This document shows positions 1,324 to 55,700 of a stretch of 64,000 nt of DNA, one piece after another. The stretch is taken from IMG/VR virus record IMGVR_UViG_3300031787_000001, positions 124,001 through 188,000 of that record, one strand, 5' to 3'. The position numbers and the translations under genes are program-made. How positions within the stretch are numbered: position 1 is the stretch's first letter; every line of letters begins with the position of its first letter. The notes under the pieces were generated by a model. That model did no database searches. It saw only the letters and a list, made by a program, of their open reading frames with translations, and was not told the origin of the DNA.

Positions 1324-2064
1324 TTACATCAAAGATTTTGCATGTCCTAAATCAATAACACCAAATTTTTGTGCTTGTTTTAAATAACCACCATTCACAA
1401 AATTATTTGGTGAATTTTTTATCATTCTCTTCCAACCATTATATTGAGTAGTGTAGTCCCATATTTTTTTTGTGTCACCCCATCCCTTTTTATATAACCA
1501 ACCACCAACATTACCACCAGTTCTATCAGCACCATGATGACAATGAATTAATGTATTTCCTTTATCCAACAATTCATTTACTTTATCTTGATCTTTTGTG
1601 GATGATAATTTATAAAATTTACACCCATTTTCTTCACAAACTCTTTTTTCTTCTTTTATGGATAATCCAGAACTATCTCCACCATCACCATTAAATCTTA
1701 CTACATTTTTTATTCCATATTTTAATATAACACCTTTTAGTGCATCTGCCGTAGGTTCTGCGGAACGATAATTGTTATCACCTAAAGGTATTTTATGGAA
1801 ATTTTTTATACTTTTATCGTTTATATCTTCCGAATCTGTCGAGAACGTAGGTCCAACGTATTCTTTACCATAAACCTCTTCATAGGCCTTTCTGGTCATT
1901 GGTCCCATAATACCATCAACACCATCTTTTTTAGGTCCATATTTACCGATATCTTTTTTATGGACATAAACTAATTCTTTTTGTATATCTTCTATACTTT
2001 TATCTTCAACATCGTCAGTTTCTAAAATTAATTTTAGTTGGCGTTCTGTAATTAAAATCTTCAT
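1324..2064 (-). CDS. Leader + peptidoglycan-binding motif + protein tyrosine/dual-specificity phosphatase
   Basis: DGVDGIMGPMT (PG_binding_1-like); IHCHHGADRTG = CX5R catalytic loop. Confidence 0.8.
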   Translation of the reverse strand: MKILITERQLKLILETDDVEDKSIEDIQKELVYVHKKDIGKYGPKKDGVDGIMGPMTRKAYEEVYGKEYVGPTFSTDSEDINDKSIKNFHKIPLGDNNYRSAEPTADALKGVILKYGIKNVVRFNGDGGDSSGLSIKEEKRVCEENGCKFYKLSSTKDQDKVNELLDKGNTLIHCHHGADRTGGNVGGWLYKKGWGDTKKIWDYTTQYNGWKRMIKNSPNNFVNGGYLKQAQKFGVIDLGHAKSLM

Positions 2065-2081
2065 AATATATATAAATATTA

Positions 2082-2603
2082 TTATAAATCTAAACCACCT
2101 TTATCTAATTTTTCAAAATTTTCTAAATCCCCAAAGTTTGGGTCTGATTTTATTTTTTCTTGTTTTGATAGTTTCATTTGATCCAATCTATGTGCATTCA
2201 TATGGTTTTTAACAATGTAATAAATAATTTCTGGATCTCCACCTTTTTCAACAATCCAATCAGAATATTTTTTTACTAATTCAGCAGACACATCTTCATG
2301 ACCATATGCAGTTGGAAAACCGGTTTTAGGGTTTATAGAATGAGTTTCATCCTTACCAATGTCATGAAACAATGCGGCTAAAATTATGTTCATGTTATTT
2401 GGGTAATTCTTAATTGCTCTTTTAACTACCATTATAACATGTTTTAACGTATTGCCTTCGGGATGATAATCAGGTCTTTGTGGTACTTTCCACAGACCAA
2501 AAAAACGATTTTTTATGTCGTCAGGTAACGAATAAATCAATTTTTTTGCATCAACATCACTTTTTATTTCTTCAAACTGTGATTCTGTTATTATAATTTT
2601 CAT
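2082..2603 (-). CDS. HD-domain phosphohydrolase resembling the C-terminal domain of multifunctional CCA enzymes
   Basis: VPQRPDYHPEG..KH, AALFHDIGK, GHE motifs. Confidence 0.8.
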   Translation of the reverse strand: MKIIITESQFEEIKSDVDAKKLIYSLPDDIKNRFFGLWKVPQRPDYHPEGNTLKHVIMVVKRAIKNYPNNMNIILAALFHDIGKDETHSINPKTGFPTAYGHEDVSAELVKKYSDWIVEKGGDPEIIYYIVKNHMNAHRLDQMKLSKQEKIKSDPNFGDLENFEKLDKGGLDL

Positions 2604-2611
2604 ACCAATAA

Positions 2612-3790
2612 TTATATTATTTTTTTGAAATTATCTAATTCAATTTTATTTATCATATCACCCACTTCTTTACCCGGTTTTAAATTCATTTTTTTCATAA
2701 CATCATCTCCACTAACGGTTAAATTAAAATTAACAAAGGCATTTAATAACTTTTTATCAATACCCTCTAAATTACCAAAAGTCATTATTTGATCGTCAGA
2801 TAAATTTGTGTTTTTTTGTATTCTTTTTAATTGAATTACATTATCTAATGACATATTTTTTAAATTAATTAAGAAAGTAATGTCCTTTATCTCATCAACA
2901 CTATATTTTAGATTATTCAATTTTTTTCCGATTGTAGATAGATCATTGTTTTTTAATAATCTTGATATAACTAAAATCGGATCTTTAATTTCTATAAAAT
3001 CTTTTGACACAGATAAACCTCTGAATATTGAATCAAATAAATTATACTTATCAATCAATTGTAAAAAATGTATTGTTGATTTAGATGATATAATTCCCTT
3101 TATAAATTCATCTCTAATCCTTTCTCCCGATATACCATCTATACTTGAATTTCTCTGTAATGATTGATCAACATTATTATCTAAATCTGAACCGAACCTA
3201 CCAGCAAATCTAATTGCTCTAAGTATTCTTAATCTATCTTCATTAAATCTATCGTCAGGGTTACCAACAGTTCTAACAATATCGTTTTTTAAATCCTCAA
3301 CACCGCCAACTAAATCAACAACTTCACCTGTGTCAATATCATAATAAAGAGCATTTATTGTGAAATCCCTTCTTTTCGCATCTGTTTCAATATCTGTAAA
3401 TTCAACTTTATCTGGTCTTCTTTTATCTGACTCTGAATAAGATTCAGATCTAAATGTTGCTATTTCATATTCATCGTTATCTGTAAAAACATTTATAACA
3501 CCGAACGCCTTTCCCGTCGGTAATGTTTTGTAACCTGAATTATTTAATATTGTTTCAACCTCATCGGGTGTTGCATCCGTGGTCAAATCATAATCTTTTG
3601 GTGTTTTACCCAATACCGCATCTCTAACCGCACCACCAACAACAAATAATTTATAGTTATTTTTTTTGAAAATATCTTTAATTTTAATAATGTCTTCAGG
3701 TATTGATATATTGAATTTTATTCTTTCTTCAACCAATAAATCTGAATACATTATTTTATTTAATTGTGATTCAGTTATAACAATTTTCAT
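2612..3790 (-). CDS. cca: Class II tRNA nucleotidyltransferase (CCA-adding enzyme)
   Basis: VGGAVRD, DYD, RRDFTINAL, EDRLRILRAIRF (EDxxR). Confidence 0.9.
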   Translation of the reverse strand: MKIVITESQLNKIMYSDLLVEERIKFNISIPEDIIKIKDIFKKNNYKLFVVGGAVRDAVLGKTPKDYDLTTDATPDEVETILNNSGYKTLPTGKAFGVINVFTDNDEYEIATFRSESYSESDKRRPDKVEFTDIETDAKRRDFTINALYYDIDTGEVVDLVGGVEDLKNDIVRTVGNPDDRFNEDRLRILRAIRFAGRFGSDLDNNVDQSLQRNSSIDGISGERIRDEFIKGIISSKSTIHFLQLIDKYNLFDSIFRGLSVSKDFIEIKDPILVISRLLKNNDLSTIGKKLNNLKYSVDEIKDITFLINLKNMSLDNVIQLKRIQKNTNLSDDQIMTFGNLEGIDKKLLNAFVNFNLTVSGDDVMKKMNLKPGKEVGDMINKIELDNFKKII

Positions 3791-3849
3791 AATATATAAA
3801 TATAAGAAACATTAACCCAACTATAAAATATTTATATAAAAAGGGGTTT

Positions 3850-4501: not shown

Positions 4502-5272
4502 CTATTTATTTAAATCAAAATCTTTTATAAATGAATCGTGTGATTTTTCATATGATTTTAACGTTTCATCTTTCTCATTACTTGTATATTGCCAATTCCA
4601 ATATAATTTATCATTTATTTTAAAACCGTAAAATTCATGAATTTTACGTTGTAAATCAATTACATTTGTTCCATTAAAATTTTGTCCTACACATATCATT
4701 CCACCCTCAATATTTTTTAACAAATTTGATTCACCTAAACTAGCGTGTCTATTTTCCAACCATGTTAATCTTTCAATTAAATTTTGATAAAACATATTTG
4801 CGGAACCCCATCTAACCGAACTTAAAAATATAACACAATCAGATTCAAATAATTCTTTACTTATTTTCCAAAGTTCATCTGATTTATTATTTATAGACGC
4901 CCAACATCTATGATGTCCCGATGGGTTTTTTTCATCATCTTTTAGAACAGATTTTTTAACACCACATGAATTACCATCAGATCTGGACACATTACCTTCA
5001 CATGGAAATATTTTTAATTCAGAAACATCTATAAGTTTTACATTATCCAATTCATCGGCCAAATATTCTGCAAGTATCTTTGATTTAGGTATGTCAATGT
5101 TACTTTTATCCCAATTGAATCTGTTCGAACAACTCAATAATAAAACCTTTTTCTTAGTTTTTAACACCTCCACCGTATCTTTTAGTTTATCTAATCCGTT
5201 TTTTCTGACGTTTTCTTCAGATAACATCATTTTACGAATTCGATTAATTTCCTCTTTTAAAATTTTTTCCAT
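4502..5272 (-). CDS. Flavodoxin-fold NAD(P)H-dependent FMN reductase / iron-sulfur flavoprotein-like protein
   Basis: IDVSELKIFPCEG..C..C, ESDCVIFLSSVRWG, LIERL motifs; EEINRIRKMM leader. Confidence 0.7.
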   Translation of the reverse strand: MEKILKEEINRIRKMMLSEENVRKNGLDKLKDTVEVLKTKKKVLLLSCSNRFNWDKSNIDIPKSKILAEYLADELDNVKLIDVSELKIFPCEGNVSRSDGNSCGVKKSVLKDDEKNPSGHHRCWASINNKSDELWKISKELFESDCVIFLSSVRWGSANMFYQNLIERLTWLENRHASLGESNLLKNIEGGMICVGQNFNGTNVIDLQRKIHEFYGFKINDKLYWNWQYTSNEKDETLKSYEKSHDSFIKDFDLNK

Positions 5273-5293: not shown

Positions 5294-5698
5294 ATGATAC
5301 TTATTGTTATGGTGTCTCTACTGTTGTTAGTTAAAAATAAAAAATTTTTATTGCTTAAAAGAAGTCCATCCGAGTACAAATATTCGGGATTTTGGGGATT
5401 ACCTGGTGGTTCTGTCGAAAAAAATGAAACCCCGACGGATGCTTTAATTAGAGAAATTGGAGAAGAACTTGGTATCAGTATCCCTAATTTTATATTATTG
5501 AATAAATACGATATGGGTAATAATTTAATAAATGTTTATGTTTATAATTCACCCGAATTTGATGAAAATAAAATTATATTAAATGATGAACACACCGAAT
5601 TTAAATTCTTCTCTTATTATGAAATTAATAATATGAAAGATATCATTCCAACAACAATCAATTTTGTAATTGATTATTTATCTAATCCAAACCTTTAA
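5294..5698 (+). CDS. NUDIX hydrolase
   Basis: Nudix box GGSVEKNETPTDALIREIGEELG. Confidence 0.9.
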   Translation: MILIVMVSLLLLVKNKKFLLLKRSPSEYKYSGFWGLPGGSVEKNETPTDALIREIGEELGISIPNFILLNKYDMGNNLINVYVYNSPEFDENKIILNDEHTEFKFFSYYEINNMKDIIPTTINFVIDYLSNPNL

Positions 5699-6092
5699 CT
5701 TCTTTATCGTACTTTTTAAATCTATTGGGATTTGACATCATTGCACTTTTTGGAAATAAACGTTTTTTACGTGTAAATGCAAAACTTCTACTACGTTCAT
5801 CGATTTCTTCTTCAGAATCCATCATCATTTCGTCCACCGCATTTGTAAATTTATAACACCTATCAGAAATTTTATTTTTATCGTGATCAAACATTGTAAC
5901 AATCACTTCATTGTATTTTACAATCATATCAGGGTGATGATTTTGTTCTTCCGCAATTTCACCTACTTTATTCACGAAATCTAACACATCTTTATAAGAA
6001 TCAAATTCAAATTTTTTACATAATTTACCTTTCACGACTTTCCAATCGGATTTAAGTTTATTCATTTGAGATTCTGTGATTATTATATTCAT
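5682..6092 (-). CDS. Pterin-4-alpha-carbinolamine dehydratase with leader and basic tail
   Basis: AEEQNHHPDM signature. Confidence 0.85.
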   Translation of the reverse strand: MNIIITESQMNKLKSDWKVVKGKLCKKFEFDSYKDVLDFVNKVGEIAEEQNHHPDMIVKYNEVIVTMFDHDKNKISDRCYKFTNAVDEMMMDSEEEIDERSRSFAFTRKKRLFPKSAMMSNPNRFKKYDKEVKGLD

Positions 6093-6122
6093 TCTTTGTT
6101 TTTTTCTATTTGATTTCTCCCC

Positions 6123-6620
6123 CTACGCTTGTATATCACTGTAACTAGATTTACTCGTTATAGTTATAAATGATTTTAATCCATCAACAATATTTCCCCA
6201 AGTTAACCCCCATTCACTATCTAATTCTTTAAATAAATCTTGTTTTTTTTGTTTACTGAATAATCTATCAACCGCACAAAATTCATTTTTGTTTTTTATT
6301 TGTTTTAGTACATTGACGGTATTTGTTGGTTTTGATAAACCTTGTATTTGATTATACAGATTATTAAATAATTGAATATTTCTATTATTATTTAAGTTAA
6401 GTTGATTGTCACCCATTCTTCTACATTCGGTAAACAAATTAAGAACATCTTTTTTATATTCAATATCACCTGTTGTACCATCATCAGAGCCAGGTACATT
6501 TAATCCGGTATTTGATGGGTCAGCTAAAACATCAGCAAGACCAAGTACAGGTTGTTCTTTTATTGTTAATGATTTAATCACTTTTTTTAATTGTGATTCT
6601 GTTATTATTATTTTTTTCAT
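6123..6620 (-). CDS. Leader + possible single annexin-like repeat
   Basis: LYNQIQGL..T..VL..I....F..V...F....DL..EL.SE pattern. Confidence 0.45.
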   Translation of the reverse strand: MKKIIITESQLKKVIKSLTIKEQPVLGLADVLADPSNTGLNVPGSDDGTTGDIEYKKDVLNLFTECRRMGDNQLNLNNNRNIQLFNNLYNQIQGLSKPTNTVNVLKQIKNKNEFCAVDRLFSKQKKQDLFKELDSEWGLTWGNIVDGLKSFITITSKSSYSDIQA

Positions 6621-6623
6621 ATA

Positions 6624-7271
6624 TTATCTCTTATAATAAGTGTCGTATACATCAGAAGTCAATCCGTAATCAATTAGGACTATTCTATTATTTCCAACTA
6701 ACCCATATGATGATAATCTACACAAATCACCCCAAGGTAATTCGTAATTAACCATAAAATCCATCATATTATAAACAAATTCATTTTCCCATATGTCATT
6801 ATAATTCTCTGGTTTTGATACAGTGAAACCAAAATCAACTGAAATACTATTACGATATTTTATTATGTGACAATAATTTTCAAATGTAACACCCACAATA
6901 TTTTTGAAAATTGACGGAGTCACTTTTTTGGCTAATTCCATTTCAACCCATAGGTTGTTTTCATCGTGATCAAATATTTTTGCAACAACATCATTCACAT
7001 AAGAATCATTACCAAAATCAATCTCAGTTTCATTTTGGGCAATACCCTTCTTGTTTTTGGCGAGCTTTAAGACCTTATTGTCATCGATTTTATACACTAT
7101 TCTACTACTACCCGAAGATAGTCTTTGGAGATGTTGATTACAATAATTAACTCTGGCAGAAAACGATGTTAATTTTTTAAATTCCTCAATACTCCAACTA
7201 GTTGGATAATCCTCATCCAAGTCTTTTTGTATTAGATTATTATATTGTGATTCAGTTATGATTATTTTCAT
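6624..7271 (-). CDS. Protein kinase-like fold protein
   Basis: SSGSSRIVY loop, VLK lysine, NETE, GDL, LIDYG. Confidence 0.7.
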   Translation of the reverse strand: MKIIITESQYNNLIQKDLDEDYPTSWSIEEFKKLTSFSARVNYCNQHLQRLSSGSSRIVYKIDDNKVLKLAKNKKGIAQNETEIDFGNDSYVNDVVAKIFDHDENNLWVEMELAKKVTPSIFKNIVGVTFENYCHIIKYRNSISVDFGFTVSKPENYNDIWENEFVYNMMDFMVNYELPWGDLCRLSSYGLVGNNRIVLIDYGLTSDVYDTYYKR

Positions 7272-7281
7272 ATTAAATTAA

Positions 7282-7869
7282 TTAAAAGTCCATACCACCC
7301 CATTCTTTAGCTCTTACATCATAATCATCTCTATCATCATAATCATCTGGTCCATCATAATCATCGTAATCTCTTTCAATTACACCTGATCCACCACAAG
7401 AACTACATCTTGATCCATCATACTGTCCTTCGCCAGTTCCATTACAATTAGAACACATATCATCACCATCTTCCTCATCATTATCGTCTTCGTCCTCATT
7501 TTTTTCATCATATAATTCAGGATTCGGAGCGAGCTCAACTTCACTTTCCATATATTCTTTCGGATATAAATCTATTCCTTCTGATTTCCAATCAATTAAA
7601 TAATATGTATCATTTGGATCATCATTTCCCAAATATTTAACCGTCAGATCGTATGAAGGTTGATCTTTTGCCGCCTCCAAATTTGGGAAAATATTCAAAA
7701 TCTTACCATAGTAACTTGGATCTTCCGATAACGATACGGGATTCATTACAATGTCTCCAACTTTAAAATTTTTATCACCAGATACATTATCTTCCTGAGA
7801 TTCATTTTCATTTAATCCCATCATTTTTTTTATACGGGAAACTTGTTCGTTTAAGTTTTGTTTTTTCAT
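7282..7869 (-). CDS. Acidic protein with DnaJ-type zinc-finger motifs
   Basis: CSNCNGTG and CSSCGGSG; EQVSRIKKMMGLNE leader. Confidence 0.75.
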   Translation of the reverse strand: MKKQNLNEQVSRIKKMMGLNENESQEDNVSGDKNFKVGDIVMNPVSLSEDPSYYGKILNIFPNLEAAKDQPSYDLTVKYLGNDDPNDTYYLIDWKSEGIDLYPKEYMESEVELAPNPELYDEKNEDEDDNDEEDGDDMCSNCNGTGEGQYDGSRCSSCGGSGVIERDYDDYDGPDDYDDRDDYDVRAKEWGGMDF

Positions 7870-7893: not shown

Positions 7894-8778
7894 TTAAGGA
7901 ATCATTATTATTGAGTAATCCCTCGTCCCTCCGTCAAATGTACCATCTTTGATTGATTTAGCACCAGGAAAATCATTTAATATTTTATCTCTTGATGGGA
8001 AGACACCTTTAGTTTTATCGTCTCTAACATTTAGTGCCAATCTTAAATAATTGATTTGTGTTTTACCTGGGCCTATTTTTAAAGAATAGTTATTTGTTTT
8101 AGTATCCAAAACAACTTGAACATTATTTAAATCAATTGAACTGCCTTTTGATTTTATTTGAATGTCTTTAATAAATTGACTTAAATCCGTACTTGTTATA
8201 TTAACACCACTATTTTGTTGTTGGTTTCCTTGTTGTGTTTGACCGCCACAATCACTTTGATAATCTCTGTGTTTCCATTGTATCCAATATTCTTCCAATC
8301 CTTCGGGTGTTTTTGTTAATTGACTAACATCCAATTCGTTATTTAATACTACATTTTCTTTTTTTCCTGATGGAATATAATTTAATATTTCACTTTTTCT
8401 TGCATTTAATTCAGGTGTATGATTCCAACCCCCAACATGGGCAAATCCCGTTCTTGCCTCACATTTATCAGAAACACCAACAAATGGAATAACAACAGTA
8501 TAGACAACATTTCCACTACCCATTCCTTTTGTTGTCATTTGTATACCTTTAAAGTCAACTTTGACATATGTTCCTGATCTATATAATTCTTTTAATTTTG
8601 CTGCAACGTATTGTGTGATCGTGTTAGAATACTTATGTGCAACATCACCCGTATTATCAAACTCAGGTCCAACGTATTTTCCCGAACAACCACCCGCACT
8701 ACATACAGGTGTTTCTGCTTGTTCAATCAATAGACCCATCATCTGTTTTATTCTATATGTTTGTTCTTGTAGGTTCAT
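7894..8778 (-). CDS. Hypothetical protein, MNLQEQ..RIKQMMGL leader
   Basis: ORF track. Confidence 0.8.
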   Translation of the reverse strand: MNLQEQTYRIKQMMGLLIEQAETPVCSAGGCSGKYVGPEFDNTGDVAHKYSNTITQYVAAKLKELYRSGTYVKVDFKGIQMTTKGMGSGNVVYTVVIPFVGVSDKCEARTGFAHVGGWNHTPELNARKSEILNYIPSGKKENVVLNNELDVSQLTKTPEGLEEYWIQWKHRDYQSDCGGQTQQGNQQQNSGVNITSTDLSQFIKDIQIKSKGSSIDLNNVQVVLDTKTNNYSLKIGPGKTQINYLRLALNVRDDKTKGVFPSRDKILNDFPGAKSIKDGTFDGGTRDYSIIMIP

Positions 8779-10912: not shown

Positions 10913-11854
10913 TTAGAAATTTATTTTAATAGGTTGACTTGATACAGTGTTTATTAATTGTGATGCCGCCTGTTGATCATTTGCAACACTTGCATTTTGT
11001 GTGTTGTAATATGTATCTCCGTTCTTGAAAACGTGTTTATTTTGTATATGTGCGTTTGCCCAATTAATTAAAAGATCATTATCTAAATTAATCATTTTTT
11101 GTCGATCCACCCCTTTATATTCTAAATAAACTAACGCCTTTACCCTATCGGTTATTTCAGGTGGTGCTTGTTGTGGTTGAGTTTGTTGAGTTTGAGTTTG
11201 TTGTGGTTTAGTTTGTTGTGTTTGTTGGCCACCCGAAGAGTTTTGACCTTTATATTTACCAAAAACCCATGCGGTGATTTTACCTCCTTCCCCATGGTAA
11301 CACCAATGTCCACACTTCCCTTTTTCATTAAAGATATCAGCGTGTCCCGATATTCCCGGCCATTTGGGGTTATTGGTTATGACAAAAATTCCTTTGTTAC
11401 CTTTTAGATATTTTTCAATATTTTCTGGAGTGTTATCTATTGAATCAATTGTAGGTTCCCCAAAAGTTCTTGTTAAATAAATTAAACTATTTTTAGCACC
11501 TGTTGTAATATCTTTACCTTTAGTGGGATACGTAATACCTTTAAACGTCCAATCTTTTTCACTTCTAAATGCACGACCACATTCTACACCCATTTTAATT
11601 AATGCCAAACATAATCTGGTTGCACATGCATTTTGGAATGTTTGTGGTGATTGTTTATATTGGTTTGGGAATATACCAGGAAAAATTTCTTCCTCATCCG
11701 CATTAGGAAAATTATTCCATAAGGCATTAAAATCCATACTTGTTACCACATTTTCAGGATTTACTGAAGCCTCGTTTAATACTTTCCTTGTTACTCCTTC
11801 GTATAGACCTCTTATTCTTGTTTTTTCTTCTTCTGTAATTATAAATTTTCCCAT
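10913..11854 (-). CDS. Leader + Tae4-family peptidoglycan amidase + Q/T-rich linker
   Basis: NACATRL (Cys) and GHADIFN (His); start reassigned to MGKFIITEEEK at 11854. Confidence 0.75.
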   Translation of the reverse strand: MGKFIITEEEKTRIRGLYEGVTRKVLNEASVNPENVVTSMDFNALWNNFPNADEEEIFPGIFPNQYKQSPQTFQNACATRLCLALIKMGVECGRAFRSEKDWTFKGITYPTKGKDITTGAKNSLIYLTRTFGEPTIDSIDNTPENIEKYLKGNKGIFVITNNPKWPGISGHADIFNEKGKCGHWCYHGEGGKITAWVFGKYKGQNSSGGQQTQQTKPQQTQTQQTQPQQAPPEITDRVKALVYLEYKGVDRQKMINLDNDLLINWANAHIQNKHVFKNGDTYYNTQNASVANDQQAASQLINTVSSQPIKINF

Positions 11855-12624: not shown

Positions 12625-13503
12625 TTATTTCACAATTTCTTTGAATTTATCCAAATAAACAGTTCTTTCGGAATCGACATTTATTAATTTAGTTGTTGGT
12701 GTCATATATTCGTCTTTGACTTTAATATAATATACACCATTGTCCACTACTCCGAGTTCATTCAAAAAGTAATTTATAAATTCATCATCTAAACCATTAC
12801 TTTTTAATAATCCAATCAATCCATCTTTTGTTAACTCAGTAGTTGGGTCTCCAATTGAAATATCAGGTTTTTGTTTTGTCACCTCATACTTAGTTAAATA
12901 TTGTTTCAAAACTTCTTTTGGGTCTCTTGGTTCCGTTAGTTTTCTAGTCTCAACATTTTTTAATAAAATATAAATTGGAGCGTGAAGTAAAACATTTTTA
13001 ATCTTTTCGTTTGGTATATATTGTAAAATACCATTTCCGATATCATCTATTATAATTTTTTTATGTCCACCATATTTTACTTCTTGAGCCATATACCAAT
13101 TTCTATAATCAAGTCCTTTTATTAAATCTTTATTATGTGGGTGCAAAGGGAAACCTACTGTTGTGTCTCCTCTTTTCTCTCCGAACCCTCCTTTTCTTTT
13201 TTCCGCCATTTGTTTATGAAATTCTTCACCTGATTGTGGATTAGGTCCATCACCAGAGTGGTCGTATTTGATTCTGTTTTGAATACATTGATCATCATCA
13301 CATCCAAACATATCACTATCAATTTGAACCCACTGATTGGGGTCTGTTGATTTAAAAAATGGAACCGCATTTAAAATTTTAGCAGTTTGTGATTTTCCCG
13401 CAGATGACGTTCCATCAATCAAAATGATTTCTTTTTCTTGGGTTTCTTCCGTAAGAAGTCCCATTATTTCTTTAATTCTTTGTATGTTTTCTTGTAGGTT
13501 CAT
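12625..13503 (-). CDS. P-loop kinase (chloramphenicol phosphotransferase-like)
   Basis: IILIDGTSSAGKS Walker A; IIIDD. Confidence 0.7.
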   Translation of the reverse strand: MNLQENIQRIKEIMGLLTEETQEKEIILIDGTSSAGKSQTAKILNAVPFFKSTDPNQWVQIDSDMFGCDDDQCIQNRIKYDHSGDGPNPQSGEEFHKQMAEKRKGGFGEKRGDTTVGFPLHPHNKDLIKGLDYRNWYMAQEVKYGGHKKIIIDDIGNGILQYIPNEKIKNVLLHAPIYILLKNVETRKLTEPRDPKEVLKQYLTKYEVTKQKPDISIGDPTTELTKDGLIGLLKSNGLDDEFINYFLNELGVVDNGVYYIKVKDEYMTPTTKLINVDSERTVYLDKFKEIVK

Positions 13504-14022
13504 TTAAGATTTATTAATTAACTCATTAATCAATTCATTGATTTTTTTTAAAGGTTCGTCAGTTCTTAAATCCAAATACATTTCATTTGGATTATCTTTA
13601 TTTGCATCAACAAAACCTAACTTTTTATAATACTCATGAAGTTTTGGTCCACTGAATTCGTCCCTTTTTAATGTAATGATGTTTATTTTATTTCTTTTTG
13701 AGTGTTCAAAAATATTTTTTAATAATATCAATCCAATACCTTTAATTGCATCATTTTTTCTATCTATTCTTTCTAAATAGAATTCTTTTGTTTTCCATGG
13801 AAGTTCAAGTTCGATACCCATTATTTCATCTTCACCGAAATATTTAACTTCCGCAGTTGCATCACCCAAAGAATAATATATGGTTGTCACATCACTTATT
13901 GCTCCTTTATTTACTTTTATATCTGCGGGAGTATTGTTCAATTCTTCTAATGTGGTACTTTCATTTTCTGAAATTAACCCCATCATTTCTTTAATCCTTT
14001 GTATGTTTTCTTGTAGGTTCAT
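13504..14022 (-). CDS. GNAT-like acetyltransferase
   Basis: KGIGLILL and YYKKLGF motifs. Confidence 0.7.
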   Translation of the reverse strand: MNLQENIQRIKEMMGLISENESTTLEELNNTPADIKVNKGAISDVTTIYYSLGDATAEVKYFGEDEIMGIELELPWKTKEFYLERIDRKNDAIKGIGLILLKNIFEHSKRNKINIITLKRDEFSGPKLHEYYKKLGFVDANKDNPNEMYLDLRTDEPLKKINELINELINKS

Positions 14023-53537: not shown

Positions 53538-53681
53538 TGGTCAGGACAGGATTCGAACCTGTTTTGTAATAAAGGGTCTCACGACAGTTATTTCTAACCT
53601 ACATTTCTGTAGCGTGGTTTGAGTAGTCCCTAAACTGTTCTCTTTTATATTACAATGGCGTACCAATTCCGCCACCTGACT
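53538..53681 (-). ncRNA. tRNA-like RNA with ~90-nt structured insert in place of the anticodon/variable arms
   Basis: 5' AGTCAGGTGGCGGAATTGGTACGC; 3' ACAGGTTCGAATCCTGT-CCTGACCA; acceptor and T stems pair. Confidence 0.75.
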
Positions 53682-54915: not shown

Positions 54916-55179
54916 TTATTGTTTGGGATACGTTTTCGCATCTGAAAATGATTCTATTGAAACGAATTCGGAATGAAGATGTTCAATAATTTCTTTCATT
55001 AATTCATGATCGGGTTTACCGTCATCTTTTTCAGAAAGTTTAACCAATAAAGATATTCCCGATACAAGTATATGAGACATTTCACTAAAACTTAATTTTG
55101 GTTGAGTTGGTGGTAACTTAATAAAAACATTTGATTTACCATCTAAAATTTCAGTCTCAACAATTACACTTAAATTCAT
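54916..55179 (-). CDS. Hypothetical protein
   Basis: ORF track. Confidence 0.65.
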   Translation of the reverse strand: MNLSVIVETEILDGKSNVFIKLPPTQPKLSFSEMSHILVSGISLLVKLSEKDDGKPDHELMKEIIEHLHSEFVSIESFSDAKTYPKQ

Positions 55180-55700
55180 TAGTCTTCATTTTTTAAAATT
55201 TTTATTAATTTTTCTTTAATTCCACTTTGTTTAATACCTTCACTTTCTTTGGGTGTTAAAACAAAATTGTCACCAAGAAATAAACTCATATCTAAATCAT
55301 CAACACTAACCCAACTTGTGATATCATTTTTATCTTCCAACCATTTTTTTATTTCTAATGATCTAAGAAGTTCTAATGTACCTGATTGATTGATTATGGG
55401 TGTGAAGTCTATTGGTTTTTTTATTACACCCATAAGTTCATAATACTTACCAATATCTTCTAATGATCCGTGAAGTTTCCAATCTGAACTAACAACTATC
55501 TCAGCATCGGTTTCAGTTAAAACTTCATTTAAAACTTTAACTGCCTTCTTATCAAAATTATCAAATCTAAATTCAATCGGAACTTCTCTTAATGTCATAG
55601 ACATTTTCATTCTACCCCACTTCTTTTGTTTCTTATAACGAGAACCAAAATTATTTGATAGACAAATTACACCATCGTGATCCAAGAATAGAATCTTCAT
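55179..55700 (-). CDS. HAD-superfamily phosphatase (Swiss-Army-Knife RNA-repair-like)
   Basis: FLDHDGVI, IVVSSDWK, VSVDDL. Confidence 0.8.
   Translation of the reverse strand: MKILFLDHDGVICLSNNFGSRYKKQKKWGRMKMSMTLREVPIEFRFDNFDKKAVKVLNEVLTETDAEIVVSSDWKLHGSLEDIGKYYELMGVIKKPIDFTPIINQSGTLELLRSLEIKKWLEDKNDITSWVSVDDLDMSLFLGDNFVLTPKESEGIKQSGIKEKLIKILKNED

What the first reader, a model, noticed from the sequence alone, without database searches (positions are those of the whole stretch)
2082..3790. Split CCA-adding enzyme plus HD phosphatase, each with its own leader
Seen: adjacent class II nucleotidyltransferase and HD-domain genes, both starting MKI(V/I)ITESQ. Known: E. coli Cca fuses these domains; HD removes 2',3'-cyclic phosphate and the NTase rebuilds CCA. 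Inference: a virion-delivered tRNA 3'-end repair kit against host RNases. A HAD RNA-repair-like gene (55179) and a tRNA-like RNA (53538) fit the theme.
Basis: partly seen in the sequence, partly recalled or inferred. Interest (0 to 1): 0.7.

Follow-up and report, generated by a model that had tools for sequence, protein, structure and literature searches.

The report
Phage CCA-adding enzyme, HD partner, shared leader
A large T4-like freshwater phage carries a complete tRNA CCA-adding enzyme next to a small HD phosphatase, an ordinary tRNA end-maturation and repair pair; their shared N-terminal "leader" sits on about twenty unrelated genes of this phage and hundreds elsewhere, and may be a capsid-targeting tag.

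Summary
Window 2612-3790(-) encodes a 392-aa class II nucleotidyltransferase and 2082-2603(-) a 173-aa HD protein, 8 nt apart. Both start MKI(V/I)ITESQ.

"Split Cca" is only half right. The transferase is a complete CCA-adding enzyme with its own body and tail. The HD protein is a free-standing relative of the HD domain of E. coli Cca.

The window lies in a 287-kb T4-like phage contig (gp21 protease, gp23 capsid). That contig has 23 tRNA genes, 21 without an encoded CCA, plus a Pnk-type kinase, an Rnl1 RNA ligase and a HAD "Swiss Army Knife" phosphatase. The most likely role is CCA addition to the phage's own tRNAs and 3'-end healing.

The leader is not special to this pair:
- It heads about 15 genes here; a second leader type heads 5 more.
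- It heads about 30 genes in a related 322-kb phage.
- It occurs at 119 or more IMG/VR loci, fused to lysozymes, sigma factors and other domains.
- Orthologues of both genes carry the other leader type.

A T4-type capsid-targeting propeptide fits the anatomy but is unproven. No packaging evidence exists. The enzymes are a modest variant of a known kind; the leader system is the interesting part.

The parts
2612..3790 (-). Full-length class II CCA-adding tRNA nucleotidyltransferase, 392 aa. Residues 1-21 are the leader (MKIVITESQ...LLVE). The catalytic core starts near R23.
   Evidence: Pfam PF01743, PF12627 and PF13735. Best NCBIfam match NF009814, a Bacillus-type CCA enzyme, 216 bits, below its cut-off of 290. 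Invariant in 46 homologues: GG.VRD, D66/D68, R124-P126, RRD 140-142, ED..R 184-188. AF2 pLDDT 91; Foldseek top hits are CCA-adding enzymes 4x4w, 6qy6 and 1miv.
2082..2603 (-). Free-standing Cca-type HD phosphohydrolase, 173 aa, with the same leader MKIIITESQ.
   Evidence: PF01966. NF008137 positions 213-317, E 2e-13. Invariant H47, H80-D81, H102, H134; D167 nearly invariant, in 82 homologues. AF2 pLDDT 96, HD fold.
3791..3849 (-). Upstream region of the transferase, carrying the recurrent motif ATATTTAT 5 nt before the ATG.
   Evidence: The motif lies within 45 nt upstream of 52 genes, including the tail tube gene. It has 108 occurrences genome-wide; its reverse complement lies upstream of only 7 genes.
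1324..2064 (-). Next gene in the same array, 246 aa, leader MKILITERQ. It carries an HCHHGADRTG (CX5R) cysteine-phosphatase-like motif. Function open.
   Evidence: Weak PF13350 match, E 0.007. The motif was read from the translation. It lies 17 nt downstream of the HD gene.
5294..5698 (+). Divergently oriented NUDIX hydrolase. It is conserved beside the transferase-HD pair in a distant relative.
   Evidence: PF00293, E 6e-16. L182 shows the same NUDIX(-)/transferase/HD order; the NUDIX proteins are 63% identical.
5682..7271 (-). Three more leader-bearing genes: a pterin-4a-carbinolamine dehydratase-like protein of 136 aa, and proteins of 165 aa and 215 aa.
   Evidence: Together they show the leader is shared by unrelated proteins.
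55179..55700 (-). HAD_SAK_2 phosphatase, an RNA-repair type HAD domain. It has no leader.
   Evidence: PF18143, E 1.7e-19.
53538..53681 (-). tRNA-like element with canonical acceptor and T arms, interrupted by about 71 nt.
   Evidence: Rfam RF00005 at 26.5 bits, cut-off 29. ARAGORN finds it only in intron mode and gives an implausible anticodon. Default ARAGORN and Rfam at gathering score find nothing.

Best explanation
The pair is a phage-encoded tRNA 3'-end maturation and repair module. It is made in the infected cell of a distant T4-like freshwater jumbo phage.

The 392-aa protein is a complete class II CCA-adding enzyme. Its first job is probably to add CCA to the phage's own tRNAs, since 21 of the 23 tRNA genes lack an encoded CCA. 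It would also rebuild trimmed 3' ends.

The 173-aa HD protein is a free-standing version of the phosphohydrolase domain that E. coli Cca carries in cis. It most likely removes 2',3'-cyclic or 3'-phosphates from damaged RNA ends. The healed ends could then be extended by the transferase or sealed by the phage's kinase plus Rnl1 ligase.

The shared MKI(I/V)ITESQ start is not a feature of this pair. It is one of two interchangeable N-terminal leader modules that this phage clade places on many unrelated proteins.

Shown here: domain identities, catalytic residues, full-length architecture, tRNA genes without CCA, the repair-gene context, and the modularity of the leader. Inferred: all enzyme activities, the substrates, and what the leader does.
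For: Transferase:
- Family and motif evidence.
- The fold matches whole CCA-adding enzymes better than E. coli poly(A) polymerase, TM 0.67-0.69 against 0.54.

HD protein:
- All metal-ligand residues are invariant.
- The nearest curated family is the Cca HD region.
- Phage relatives sit inside fused Cca genes.

Genome context:
- 23 tRNA genes; only tRNA-Leu(taa) and tRNA-His encode CCA.
- An AAA_33 kinase and an RNA_lig_T4_1 ligase lie directly upstream of the tRNA array; a HAD_SAK_2 gene lies in the window.

Gene neighbourhood elsewhere:
- The transferase-HD-NUDIX order recurs in a 310-kb contig where the HD protein is only 49% identical.
- In another contig the HD gene lies 1.5 kb from a kinase plus Rnl1.

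Precedent:
- Homologous transferases occur in 398 phage records.
- Jumbo phage XacN1 combines 56 tRNA genes with a CCA transferase and a PNKP (PMC5852040).
- An HD domain supplies the 3'-phosphatase of the phage RM378 polynucleotide kinase (PMC1997131). RM378 is the closest cultured relative by capsid protein.
Against: - No activity has been measured.
- The transferase scores below the trusted cut-off of every NCBIfam equivalog, 216 against 290. CCA-adding, as opposed to A-adding or tailing, is therefore inferred from motifs and fold.
- The pair is not stably linked. Transferase orthologues at 52-66% identity have no HD gene within 6 kb.
- Two complete related genomes lack the HD gene altogether.
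- An 80%-identical HD gene sits without a transferase nearby.
- A host CCA-adding enzyme would probably serve the phage tRNAs as well, so need is not shown.
- RNA-library contigs touch the HD gene but not the transferase, and do not prove transcription.
Confidence: 0.62

Rival explanations
1. The leader is a T4-type capsid-targeting propeptide. Leader-bearing proteins, including the transferase and the HD protein, would be loaded into the prohead core. The gp21-type protease would trim them at hydrophobic-x-Glu sites, and they would be injected with the DNA. Repair enzymes would then already be present when host tRNA-cleaving defences fire.
For: - The phage has the T4 head module in T4 gene order: portal, two small genes, an S77 protease, a scaffold and a gp23-type capsid protein.
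- T4 internal proteins are diverse cargo sharing only a 10-19-residue N-terminal targeting propeptide, which gp21 cleaves (PMC3012670; PMC9026906; PMC5694885).
- Here the leader is strictly N-terminal and heads unrelated proteins.
- It contains I-T-E and is usually followed by a second hydrophobic-x-E within residues 11-28: 16 of 19 leader proteins against 95 of 275 others, p = 2.5e-5.
- E21 and R23 at the leader-core junction are conserved in 90% or more of 46 transferase homologues, whatever leader they carry.
- AF2 gives residues 1-20 a pLDDT of 54 and the core from residue 21 a pLDDT above 90.
- Orthologues swap leader type, or lack a leader.
- 9 of 19 leader genes carry the upstream motif ATATTTAT, which the tail tube gene also has, against 52 of 373 genes overall.
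- Cargo includes cell-wall hydrolases without signal peptides, namely lysozyme, LysM and Tae4 domains, beside nucleic-acid enzymes. Delivery by the virion would suit both kinds.
Against: - There are no virion proteomics, no cleavage data and no cultured relative.
- Hydrophobic-x-E is common in Glu/Lys/Ile-rich helices.
- Roughly 20 to 36 leader proteins per genome, among them sigma-factor-like proteins, is far more than the handful known for T4.
- In the HD model the segment after the leader packs as a confident helix.
- The upstream motif has not been shown to be a late promoter.
Confidence: 0.3
2. The leader is a tag for something other than the capsid. It could be a recognition signal for a Clp-type unfoldase or protease that sets protein lifetime, a docking helix for a shared partner, or an N-terminus selected for efficient translation in a host that makes little use of Shine-Dalgarno sites.
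For: - The phage encodes a two-ring Clp/Hsp100 AAA+ protein.
- The leader is short, starts Met-Lys followed by hydrophobic residues, and is followed by an amphipathic helix.
- The cargo range is very broad.
- Upstream regions lack obvious ribosome-binding sites.
Against: - Synonymous sites vary while the peptide is kept, so a purely RNA-level role is unlikely.
- Two unrelated leader sequences are interchangeable on the same cargo. That fits an address label better than a translation effect.
- Nothing links the Clp-like protein to the leader.
Confidence: 0.3
3. The HD protein works mainly with the kinase and the Rnl1 ligase to heal anticodon-loop breaks, as in the T4 Pnkp/Rnl1 pathway. Its position next to the transferase would then be incidental.
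For: - The kinase here is a bare 141-aa AAA_33 domain with no phosphatase domain, so a separate 3'-phosphatase is needed.
- In L180 a 70%-identical HD gene lies 1.5 kb from a kinase plus Rnl1.
- The RM378 polynucleotide kinase uses an HD domain as its 3'-phosphatase.
Against: - Transferase-HD adjacency recurs in a lineage with only 49% HD identity.
- HAD_SAK_2 proteins could fill the phosphatase role; a related phage has two of them and no HD gene.
- The two roles are not mutually exclusive.
Confidence: 0.3
4. The 392-aa enzyme is not a CCA-adding enzyme. It would be a poly(A) polymerase or other RNA-tailing enzyme that marks host RNA for decay.
For: - TIGR01942 (pcnB) scores 197 bits over residues 32-258, and E. 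coli poly(A) polymerase structures match at E 2e-39.
- Some phage homologues are annotated as poly(A) polymerase.
Against: - The best matches over the full length are CCA-adding enzymes.
- The loop motif RRP between motifs A and B is intact, and a Bacillus-type tail domain is present.
- The poly(A) polymerase fold match is poorer, TM 0.54.
- 21 CCA-less tRNA genes supply an obvious substrate.
Confidence: 0.07

Closest known systems
E. coli multifunctional Cca (CCA addition/repair protein, NF008137)
   Same: It combines a class II head with an HD phosphohydrolase. The HD domain has 2',3'-cyclic phosphodiesterase, 2'-nucleotidase and phosphatase activity (Yakunin et al. 2004, cited). The phage HD protein matches its HD region at E 2e-13.
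   Different: In Cca the HD domain is part of the C-terminal half of a single 412-aa chain. Here the transferase has its own non-HD body and tail, and the HD domain is a separate 173-aa protein. The transferase matches NF008137 only over the head, positions 2-199.
Bacillus/Planococcus-type CCA-adding enzymes (NF009814; PDB 1miv, 6qy6)
   Same: Same four-part architecture and catalytic motifs. These are the best sequence and fold matches over the whole length.
   Different: About 28% identity. The score is below the family's trusted cut-off. The phage protein has an extra 21-residue N-terminal leader that cellular enzymes lack.
Phage-encoded tRNA nucleotidyltransferases of tRNA-rich jumbo phages (for example XacN1, Atu_ph07, Brevundimonas phages)
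   Same: A transferase encoded together with a large tRNA gene set and RNA-repair genes.
   Different: At most 34% identity. Several of those carry the HD domain fused. None is reported with a shared leader.
Phage RM378 polynucleotide kinase/3'-phosphatase
   Same: In this phage RNA end-healing enzyme the 3'-phosphatase is an HD domain. RM378 is also the nearest cultured relative by capsid protein.
   Different: In RM378 the HD domain is fused to the kinase. Here the kinase (141 aa) and the HD protein (173 aa) are separate genes about 50 kb apart. No close sequence match to RM378 appeared at E 1e-5 or better.
T4 internal proteins and Alt with their capsid-targeting sequence
   Same: A short N-terminal peptide shared by otherwise unrelated, fast-evolving, clustered genes in a phage with a gp21-type protease. 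Hydrophobic-x-Glu motifs are present.
   Different: There is no sequence similarity to the T4 targeting sequence. There are far more carriers, about 20-36 per genome, in two interchangeable leader families. The cargo includes enzymes not known to be packaged. Packaging and cleavage are untested.

Membership tests
Class II CCA-adding tRNA nucleotidyltransferase | Motif A (GGxVRD followed by the DxD carboxylates) | tested here: met
   G52, G53, R56, D57, D66 and D68 are invariant in 46 homologues. PF01743 E 2e-40.
Class II CCA-adding tRNA nucleotidyltransferase | Motif B (RRD) and motif D (EDxxR nucleotide template) | tested here: met
   R140, R141, D142 and E184, D185, R188 are invariant.
Class II CCA-adding tRNA nucleotidyltransferase | Intact flexible loop between motifs A and B (lost in CC-adding enzymes) | tested here: met
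   The loop ESYSESDKRRPD is present; R124 and P126 are invariant and R125 is conserved in 90% or more. That the loop matters for A-addition is from my own knowledge of the literature.
Class II CCA-adding tRNA nucleotidyltransferase | Neck, body and tail domains for tRNA binding (full-length enzyme) | tested here: met
   NF009814 positions 16-372 of 396 are covered. The AF2 model aligns over 373-398 columns to 4x4w, 6qy6 and 1miv, TM 0.67-0.69.
Class II CCA-adding tRNA nucleotidyltransferase | Score above a curated equivalog cut-off | tested here: not met
   The best is NF009814 at 215.9 bits against a cut-off of 290. It is a divergent phage clade.
Class II CCA-adding tRNA nucleotidyltransferase | Adds C, C, A to tRNA without a template | not testable with these tools
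   Needs an enzyme assay.
HD-domain phosphohydrolase, Cca type | The His...His-Asp...His...His...Asp metal ligands | tested here: met
   H47, H80, D81, H102 and H134 are invariant and D167 is conserved in 90% or more, in 82 homologues. PF01966 scores 39.2 bits against a cut-off of 22.
HD-domain phosphohydrolase, Cca type | Specific kinship to the HD domain of tRNA nucleotidyltransferases | tested here: inconclusive
   The best NCBIfam hit is the Cca HD region, E 2e-13. PDB sequence hits go only to the HD part of 3wfo-3wfs, E about 1e-3. Foldseek gives generic HD folds with no hit at E 0.001 or better, and 3wfr has the highest TM at 0.57.
HD-domain phosphohydrolase, Cca type | 2',3'-cyclic phosphodiesterase or phosphatase activity on RNA ends | not testable with these tools
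   Needs an enzyme assay.
Split Cca (one enzyme divided into two genes) | The transferase gene lacks the C-terminal half that the HD gene would supply | tested here: not met
   The transferase is full length with its own body and tail. The HD gene is absent beside most orthologues.
T4-type capsid-targeting propeptide | Phage has the gp21-type (S77) prohead protease and a T4-type head module | tested here: met
   PF03420 at 80 bits and PF07068 at 215 bits in the same genome. The protease is also present in both complete relatives examined.
T4-type capsid-targeting propeptide | Short N-terminal peptide shared by otherwise unrelated proteins | tested here: met
T4-type capsid-targeting propeptide | Ends in a protease site (hydrophobic-x-Glu) | tested here: inconclusive
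   The motif is present and enriched, p = 2.5e-5, and E21 at the junction is conserved. The motif is short, however, and the proteins are Glu-rich.
T4-type capsid-targeting propeptide | Protein found in virions with the leader removed | not testable with these tools
   There is no cultured relative and no proteome. The protease-leader co-fold gave no verdict.

The most novel reading that the evidence does not exclude
The two interchangeable leaders (MKIIITESQ... and MNLQENIxRIKxMMGL...) would be capsid-targeting propeptides of a large, uncultured clade of distant T4-like freshwater jumbo phages. These phages would then pack and inject dozens of different enzymes: a CCA-adding enzyme, an RNA-end phosphatase, cell-wall hydrolases, sigma-like factors, nucleases and methyltransferases. 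That is a far wider injected arsenal than is known for any T4-type phage. The tRNA repair pair would be delivered ready-made against tRNA-cutting defences.
Probability: 0.3. Interest if true: 0.8.

Novelty: new variant of a known kind. Interest (0 to 1): 0.5.

Why it matters
The enzyme pair adds little on its own. Phage CCA-adding enzymes beside large tRNA sets and RNA-repair genes are already known, and an HD end-healing domain as a separate gene is a small variation.

The broader value lies in the leader. It is a strictly N-terminal, peptide-level conserved, modular tag. It is exchangeable between two unrelated sequence types on the same cargo. It is carried by 5-10% of the genes of abundant lake phages.

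If it is a capsid address label, it offers a sequence-only way to list the injected proteins of uncultured phages. It would also show that tRNA repair can be delivered with the genome. If it is another kind of tag, it is still an undescribed sorting or control signal in phage biology. No paper in the searched library contains the motif.

Tried and rejected
- Co-folding the prohead protease with residues 1-40 of the transferase gave no verdict, score 0.00. This counts neither for nor against binding.
- The DNA of the region (blastn) has no match in the phage collection.
- tblastn with 25-residue leader queries against cultured phages found nothing, probably because the queries are too short.
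- The T4 late-promoter word TATAAATA is not enriched, 110 found against about 121 expected. It was dropped in favour of the empirically found ATATTTAT.
- ARAGORN and Rfam at gathering score find no tRNA in the window. Only the relaxed search finds the interrupted tRNA-like element.
- Foldseek of the HD model gave only generic HD folds.
- Metatranscriptome contigs cover parts of 196-1671 and 2314-2567 at low depth. The tool warns that this does not show transcription.
- A literal 'split Cca' was considered and rejected, because the transferase is complete.
- A signal peptide was considered and rejected: the leader has five hydrophobic residues followed by Glu, which is too short, and its cargo includes cytoplasmic enzymes.
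Full report
**What is at the coordinates.** Two minus-strand ORFs fill 2082-3790.

The upstream ORF (2612-3790, 392 aa) has several family matches:
- a PolyA_pol head domain at E 2e-40;
- the RNA-binding neck domain PF12627;
- a weak match to the Bacillus-type tail domain PF13735.

Its best curated family is the Bacillus-type CCA tRNA nucleotidyltransferase NF009814. The match covers profile positions 16-372 of 396 at 216 bits, below the trusted cut-off of 290. The best solved relative is the Planococcus CCA-adding enzyme, E 4e-42.

The downstream ORF (2082-2603, 173 aa) is an HD domain protein: PF01966, 39 bits against a cut-off of 22. Its best curated match is the HD region of the E. coli multifunctional Cca, NF008137 positions 213-317, E 2e-13.

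The genes are 8 nt apart. Three more co-directional genes follow at gaps of 17, 41 and 1 nt, with no terminator-like site on that strand until position 700-683. Both proteins begin MKI(V/I)ITESQ.

**Is it a split Cca?** Only in a loose sense.

An alignment of 46 homologues keeps every catalytic element of a class II CCA-adding enzyme:
- GGxVRD and the DxD carboxylates (D66, D68);
- the RRP loop motif;
- RRD;
- EDxxR;
- the RxxRF motif.

The AlphaFold2 model (pLDDT 91) aligns over about 380-400 columns to whole CCA-adding enzymes: human mitochondrial 4x4w, Planococcus 6qy6 and Bacillus 1miv, TM 0.67-0.69. E. coli poly(A) polymerase fits worse, at TM 0.54. The transferase is therefore complete, with its own body and tail, and has not lost a half to the neighbouring gene.

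The HD protein belongs to a large family of free-standing 160-300-aa proteins on long, phage-like metagenomic contigs. H47, H80-D81, H102 and H134 are invariant in it, and its model is a confident HD fold (pLDDT 96). In cultured phages its relatives lie mostly inside genes annotated as tRNA nucleotidyltransferase or Cca. Kinship with the Cca HD domain is thus plausible, although fold search returns only generic HD folds.

The window is bases 124,001-188,000 of a 286,785-bp IMG/VR contig with 30.5% G+C. The contig is found in freshwater lake metagenomes from several studies.

The phage is a distant T4 relative:
- It has an S77 (gp21-type) prohead protease and a gp23-type capsid protein, in the T4 order portal, two small genes, protease, scaffold, capsid.
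- The nearest cultured relative by capsid protein is Rhodothermus phage RM378, at 29% identity.

The genome holds 23 tRNA genes at 81.7-89.0 kb. All encode C74, but only tRNA-Leu(taa) and tRNA-His continue with CA. The other 21 therefore need CCA completion after transcription.

Directly upstream of the tRNA array lie a 141-aa AAA_33 kinase with no phosphatase domain and an Rnl1-family RNA ligase. The window gene at 55179-55700 is a HAD_SAK_2 'Swiss Army Knife RNA repair' phosphatase.

The phage thus carries a full RNA end-healing and sealing set plus a CCA-adding enzyme. Jumbo phages with many tRNA genes are already known to do this, for example XacN1, and homologous transferases occur in 398 phage records.

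**How stable is the pair?** Not very.
- Transferase orthologues at 52-66% identity on seven other viral contigs have no HD gene within 6 kb.
- A complete 340-kb relative has the transferase but no HD gene.
- A complete 322-kb relative has the kinase, the ligase and two HAD genes, only a distant transferase, and no HD gene.
- An 80%-identical HD gene sits in a leader-gene cluster without a transferase.
- A 70%-identical HD gene sits 1.5 kb from a kinase plus Rnl1.
- In contrast, a 310-kb contig whose HD protein is only 49% identical repeats the order NUDIX (opposite strand), transferase, HD.

The HD gene therefore travels with RNA-end enzymes of either kind. That fits a general 3'-end healing role. 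An HD domain is the 3'-phosphatase of the RM378 polynucleotide kinase.

**The leader.** This is the unexpected part.
- *N-terminal only.* In this genome the motif is almost exclusively N-terminal, 8 of 9 occurrences in 87,137 residues.
- *Two types.* About 15 genes carry it, mostly at genome 96-140 kb. A second leader, MNLQENIxRIKxMMGL, heads five more.
- *Peptide-level conservation.* Codon third positions differ between copies.
- *Relatives.* A related complete phage of 322 kb has about 30 genes of the first type and 6 of the second.
The proteins behind it are unrelated. They include 7 phage lysozymes, 3 LysM proteins, 3 sigma-70-like proteins, 2 SET domains, an RNase T-type exonuclease, a DHH phosphoesterase and a pterin dehydratase.
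- *In the window.* A leader variant also heads a Tae4-type cell-wall amidase.
- *Interchangeable.* In the 310-kb contig both the transferase and the HD orthologues carry the second leader type instead of the first.
- *Other starts.* Other orthologues carry further amphipathic leaders such as MKNEIKQILREGL, a zinc ribbon between leader and enzyme, or no leader.

The leader is therefore a modular label attached to cargo, not an ancestral part of these enzymes.

**What the leader might be.** The closest known analogue is the T4 capsid-targeting sequence. T4 internal proteins are diverse and share only a 10-19-residue N-terminal propeptide. It directs them into the prohead core and is then cut off by gp21.

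Points that fit:
- The same protease family is present.
- The leader contains I-T-E.
- A second hydrophobic-x-Glu follows within residues 11-28 in 16 of 19 leader proteins, against 95 of 275 others (p = 2.5e-5), with a similar result in the relative.
- In the transferase family the junction Glu21 and Arg23 are conserved whatever the leader.
- AlphaFold2 leaves residues 1-20 at pLDDT 54 and starts the confident core at residue 21.
- Nine of 19 leader genes have the strand-specific upstream word ATATTTAT, which also precedes the tail tube and a head-tail adaptor gene.
- Cell-wall hydrolases without signal peptides share the tag with nucleic-acid enzymes.

Points against:
- There are no proteomic or cleavage data.
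- The motif is short and the proteins are Glu-rich.
- There are many more carriers than in T4.
- The co-fold of protease and leader gave no verdict.
- A phage Clp/Hsp100-type ATPase offers an alternative reader of N-terminal tags.

I put capsid targeting at about 0.3.

- *HAD gene.* The claim holds.
- *tRNA-like RNA.* It is real as a sequence resemblance. Rfam's tRNA model spans its full length at 53538-53681(-), but at 26.5 bits against a cut-off of 29, with about 71 extra bases. ARAGORN calls it only in intron mode, with an implausible anticodon. Whether it is an intron-bearing tRNA, a decayed gene or a mimic is open.

**Verdict.** The enzymes are an ordinary, if neatly arranged, phage tRNA 3'-end maturation and repair pair. 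It is a new variant of a known kind, with activities inferred and not shown. 'Virion-delivered' is a reasonable but unproven extension. The finding's real interest lies in the clade-wide leader system that it happened to touch.

Noticed in passing
window 7282-7869, 7894-8778, 12625-13503, 13504-14022 (all minus strand); weaker at 4502-5272: A second shared N-terminal leader, MNLQENIxRIKxMMGL, heads five otherwise unrelated genes. In other contigs it replaces the MKIIITESQ leader on the transferase and HD orthologues.
   Followed up: partly
window 3796-3803 and upstream of 51 other genes of the contig: The strand-specific upstream word ATATTTAT lies 4-37 nt before start codons. 52 of its 108 occurrences are within 45 nt upstream of genes, against 7 genes for the reverse complement. 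It precedes the tail tube and an adaptor-like gene and 9 of 19 leader genes, so it may be a late promoter or a start-site element.
   Followed up: partly
window 10913-11854 (-): A 313-aa protein with a leader variant (MGKFIITEEE) carries a Tae4-type peptidoglycan amidase domain (PF14113, E 2e-12) and no signal peptide.
   Followed up: no
window 1324-2064 (-): A leader-bearing 246-aa protein just downstream of the HD gene has a cysteine-phosphatase signature (HCHHGADRTG) and a peptidoglycan-binding-like stretch. Its role is unknown; RNA or protein phosphatase are both possible.
   Followed up: no
window 53538-53681 (-): A tRNA-like element with canonical acceptor and T arms is interrupted by about 71 nt. 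It scores below Rfam's gathering score and is not called by default ARAGORN.
   Followed up: partly
genome C1:81744-88990 (outside the window; locus L137): All 23 tRNA genes encode C74, but 21 continue with A, G or C rather than CA. The spacers between genes are only 3-8 nt in places. This uniform 'N-C-A' trailer may reflect a particular 3'-processing route.
   Followed up: partly
genome C1:74632-78572 (locus L137:632-4572): A two-ring Clp/Hsp100-type AAA+ ATPase of 671 aa lies next to the bare kinase (141 aa) and the Rnl1 RNA ligase (356 aa), just upstream of the tRNA array.
   Followed up: partly
L133 and L136, 4690-6834: In two viral contigs the transferase orthologue is divided into a 122-aa head piece and a 294-aa remainder. 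A GIY-YIG-type endonuclease gene and a small ORF lie between them.
   Followed up: no
proteins P0010, P0016, P0078, P0080, P0099; also L093 and L123: Some transferase orthologues and other leader proteins carry a CxxC...CxxC zinc-ribbon module (CKKCGWSWK...CHKC) between the leader and the enzyme domain. It is another mobile N-terminal module.
   Followed up: no
genome C1:68038-69357 (locus L139:12038-13357, minus strand): A 439-aa protein inside the head and packaging module, next to the large terminase gene, starts with a leader-like MKIVISKKNLLSLVKENIEE. It is conserved in both complete relatives and has no family match.
   Followed up: no
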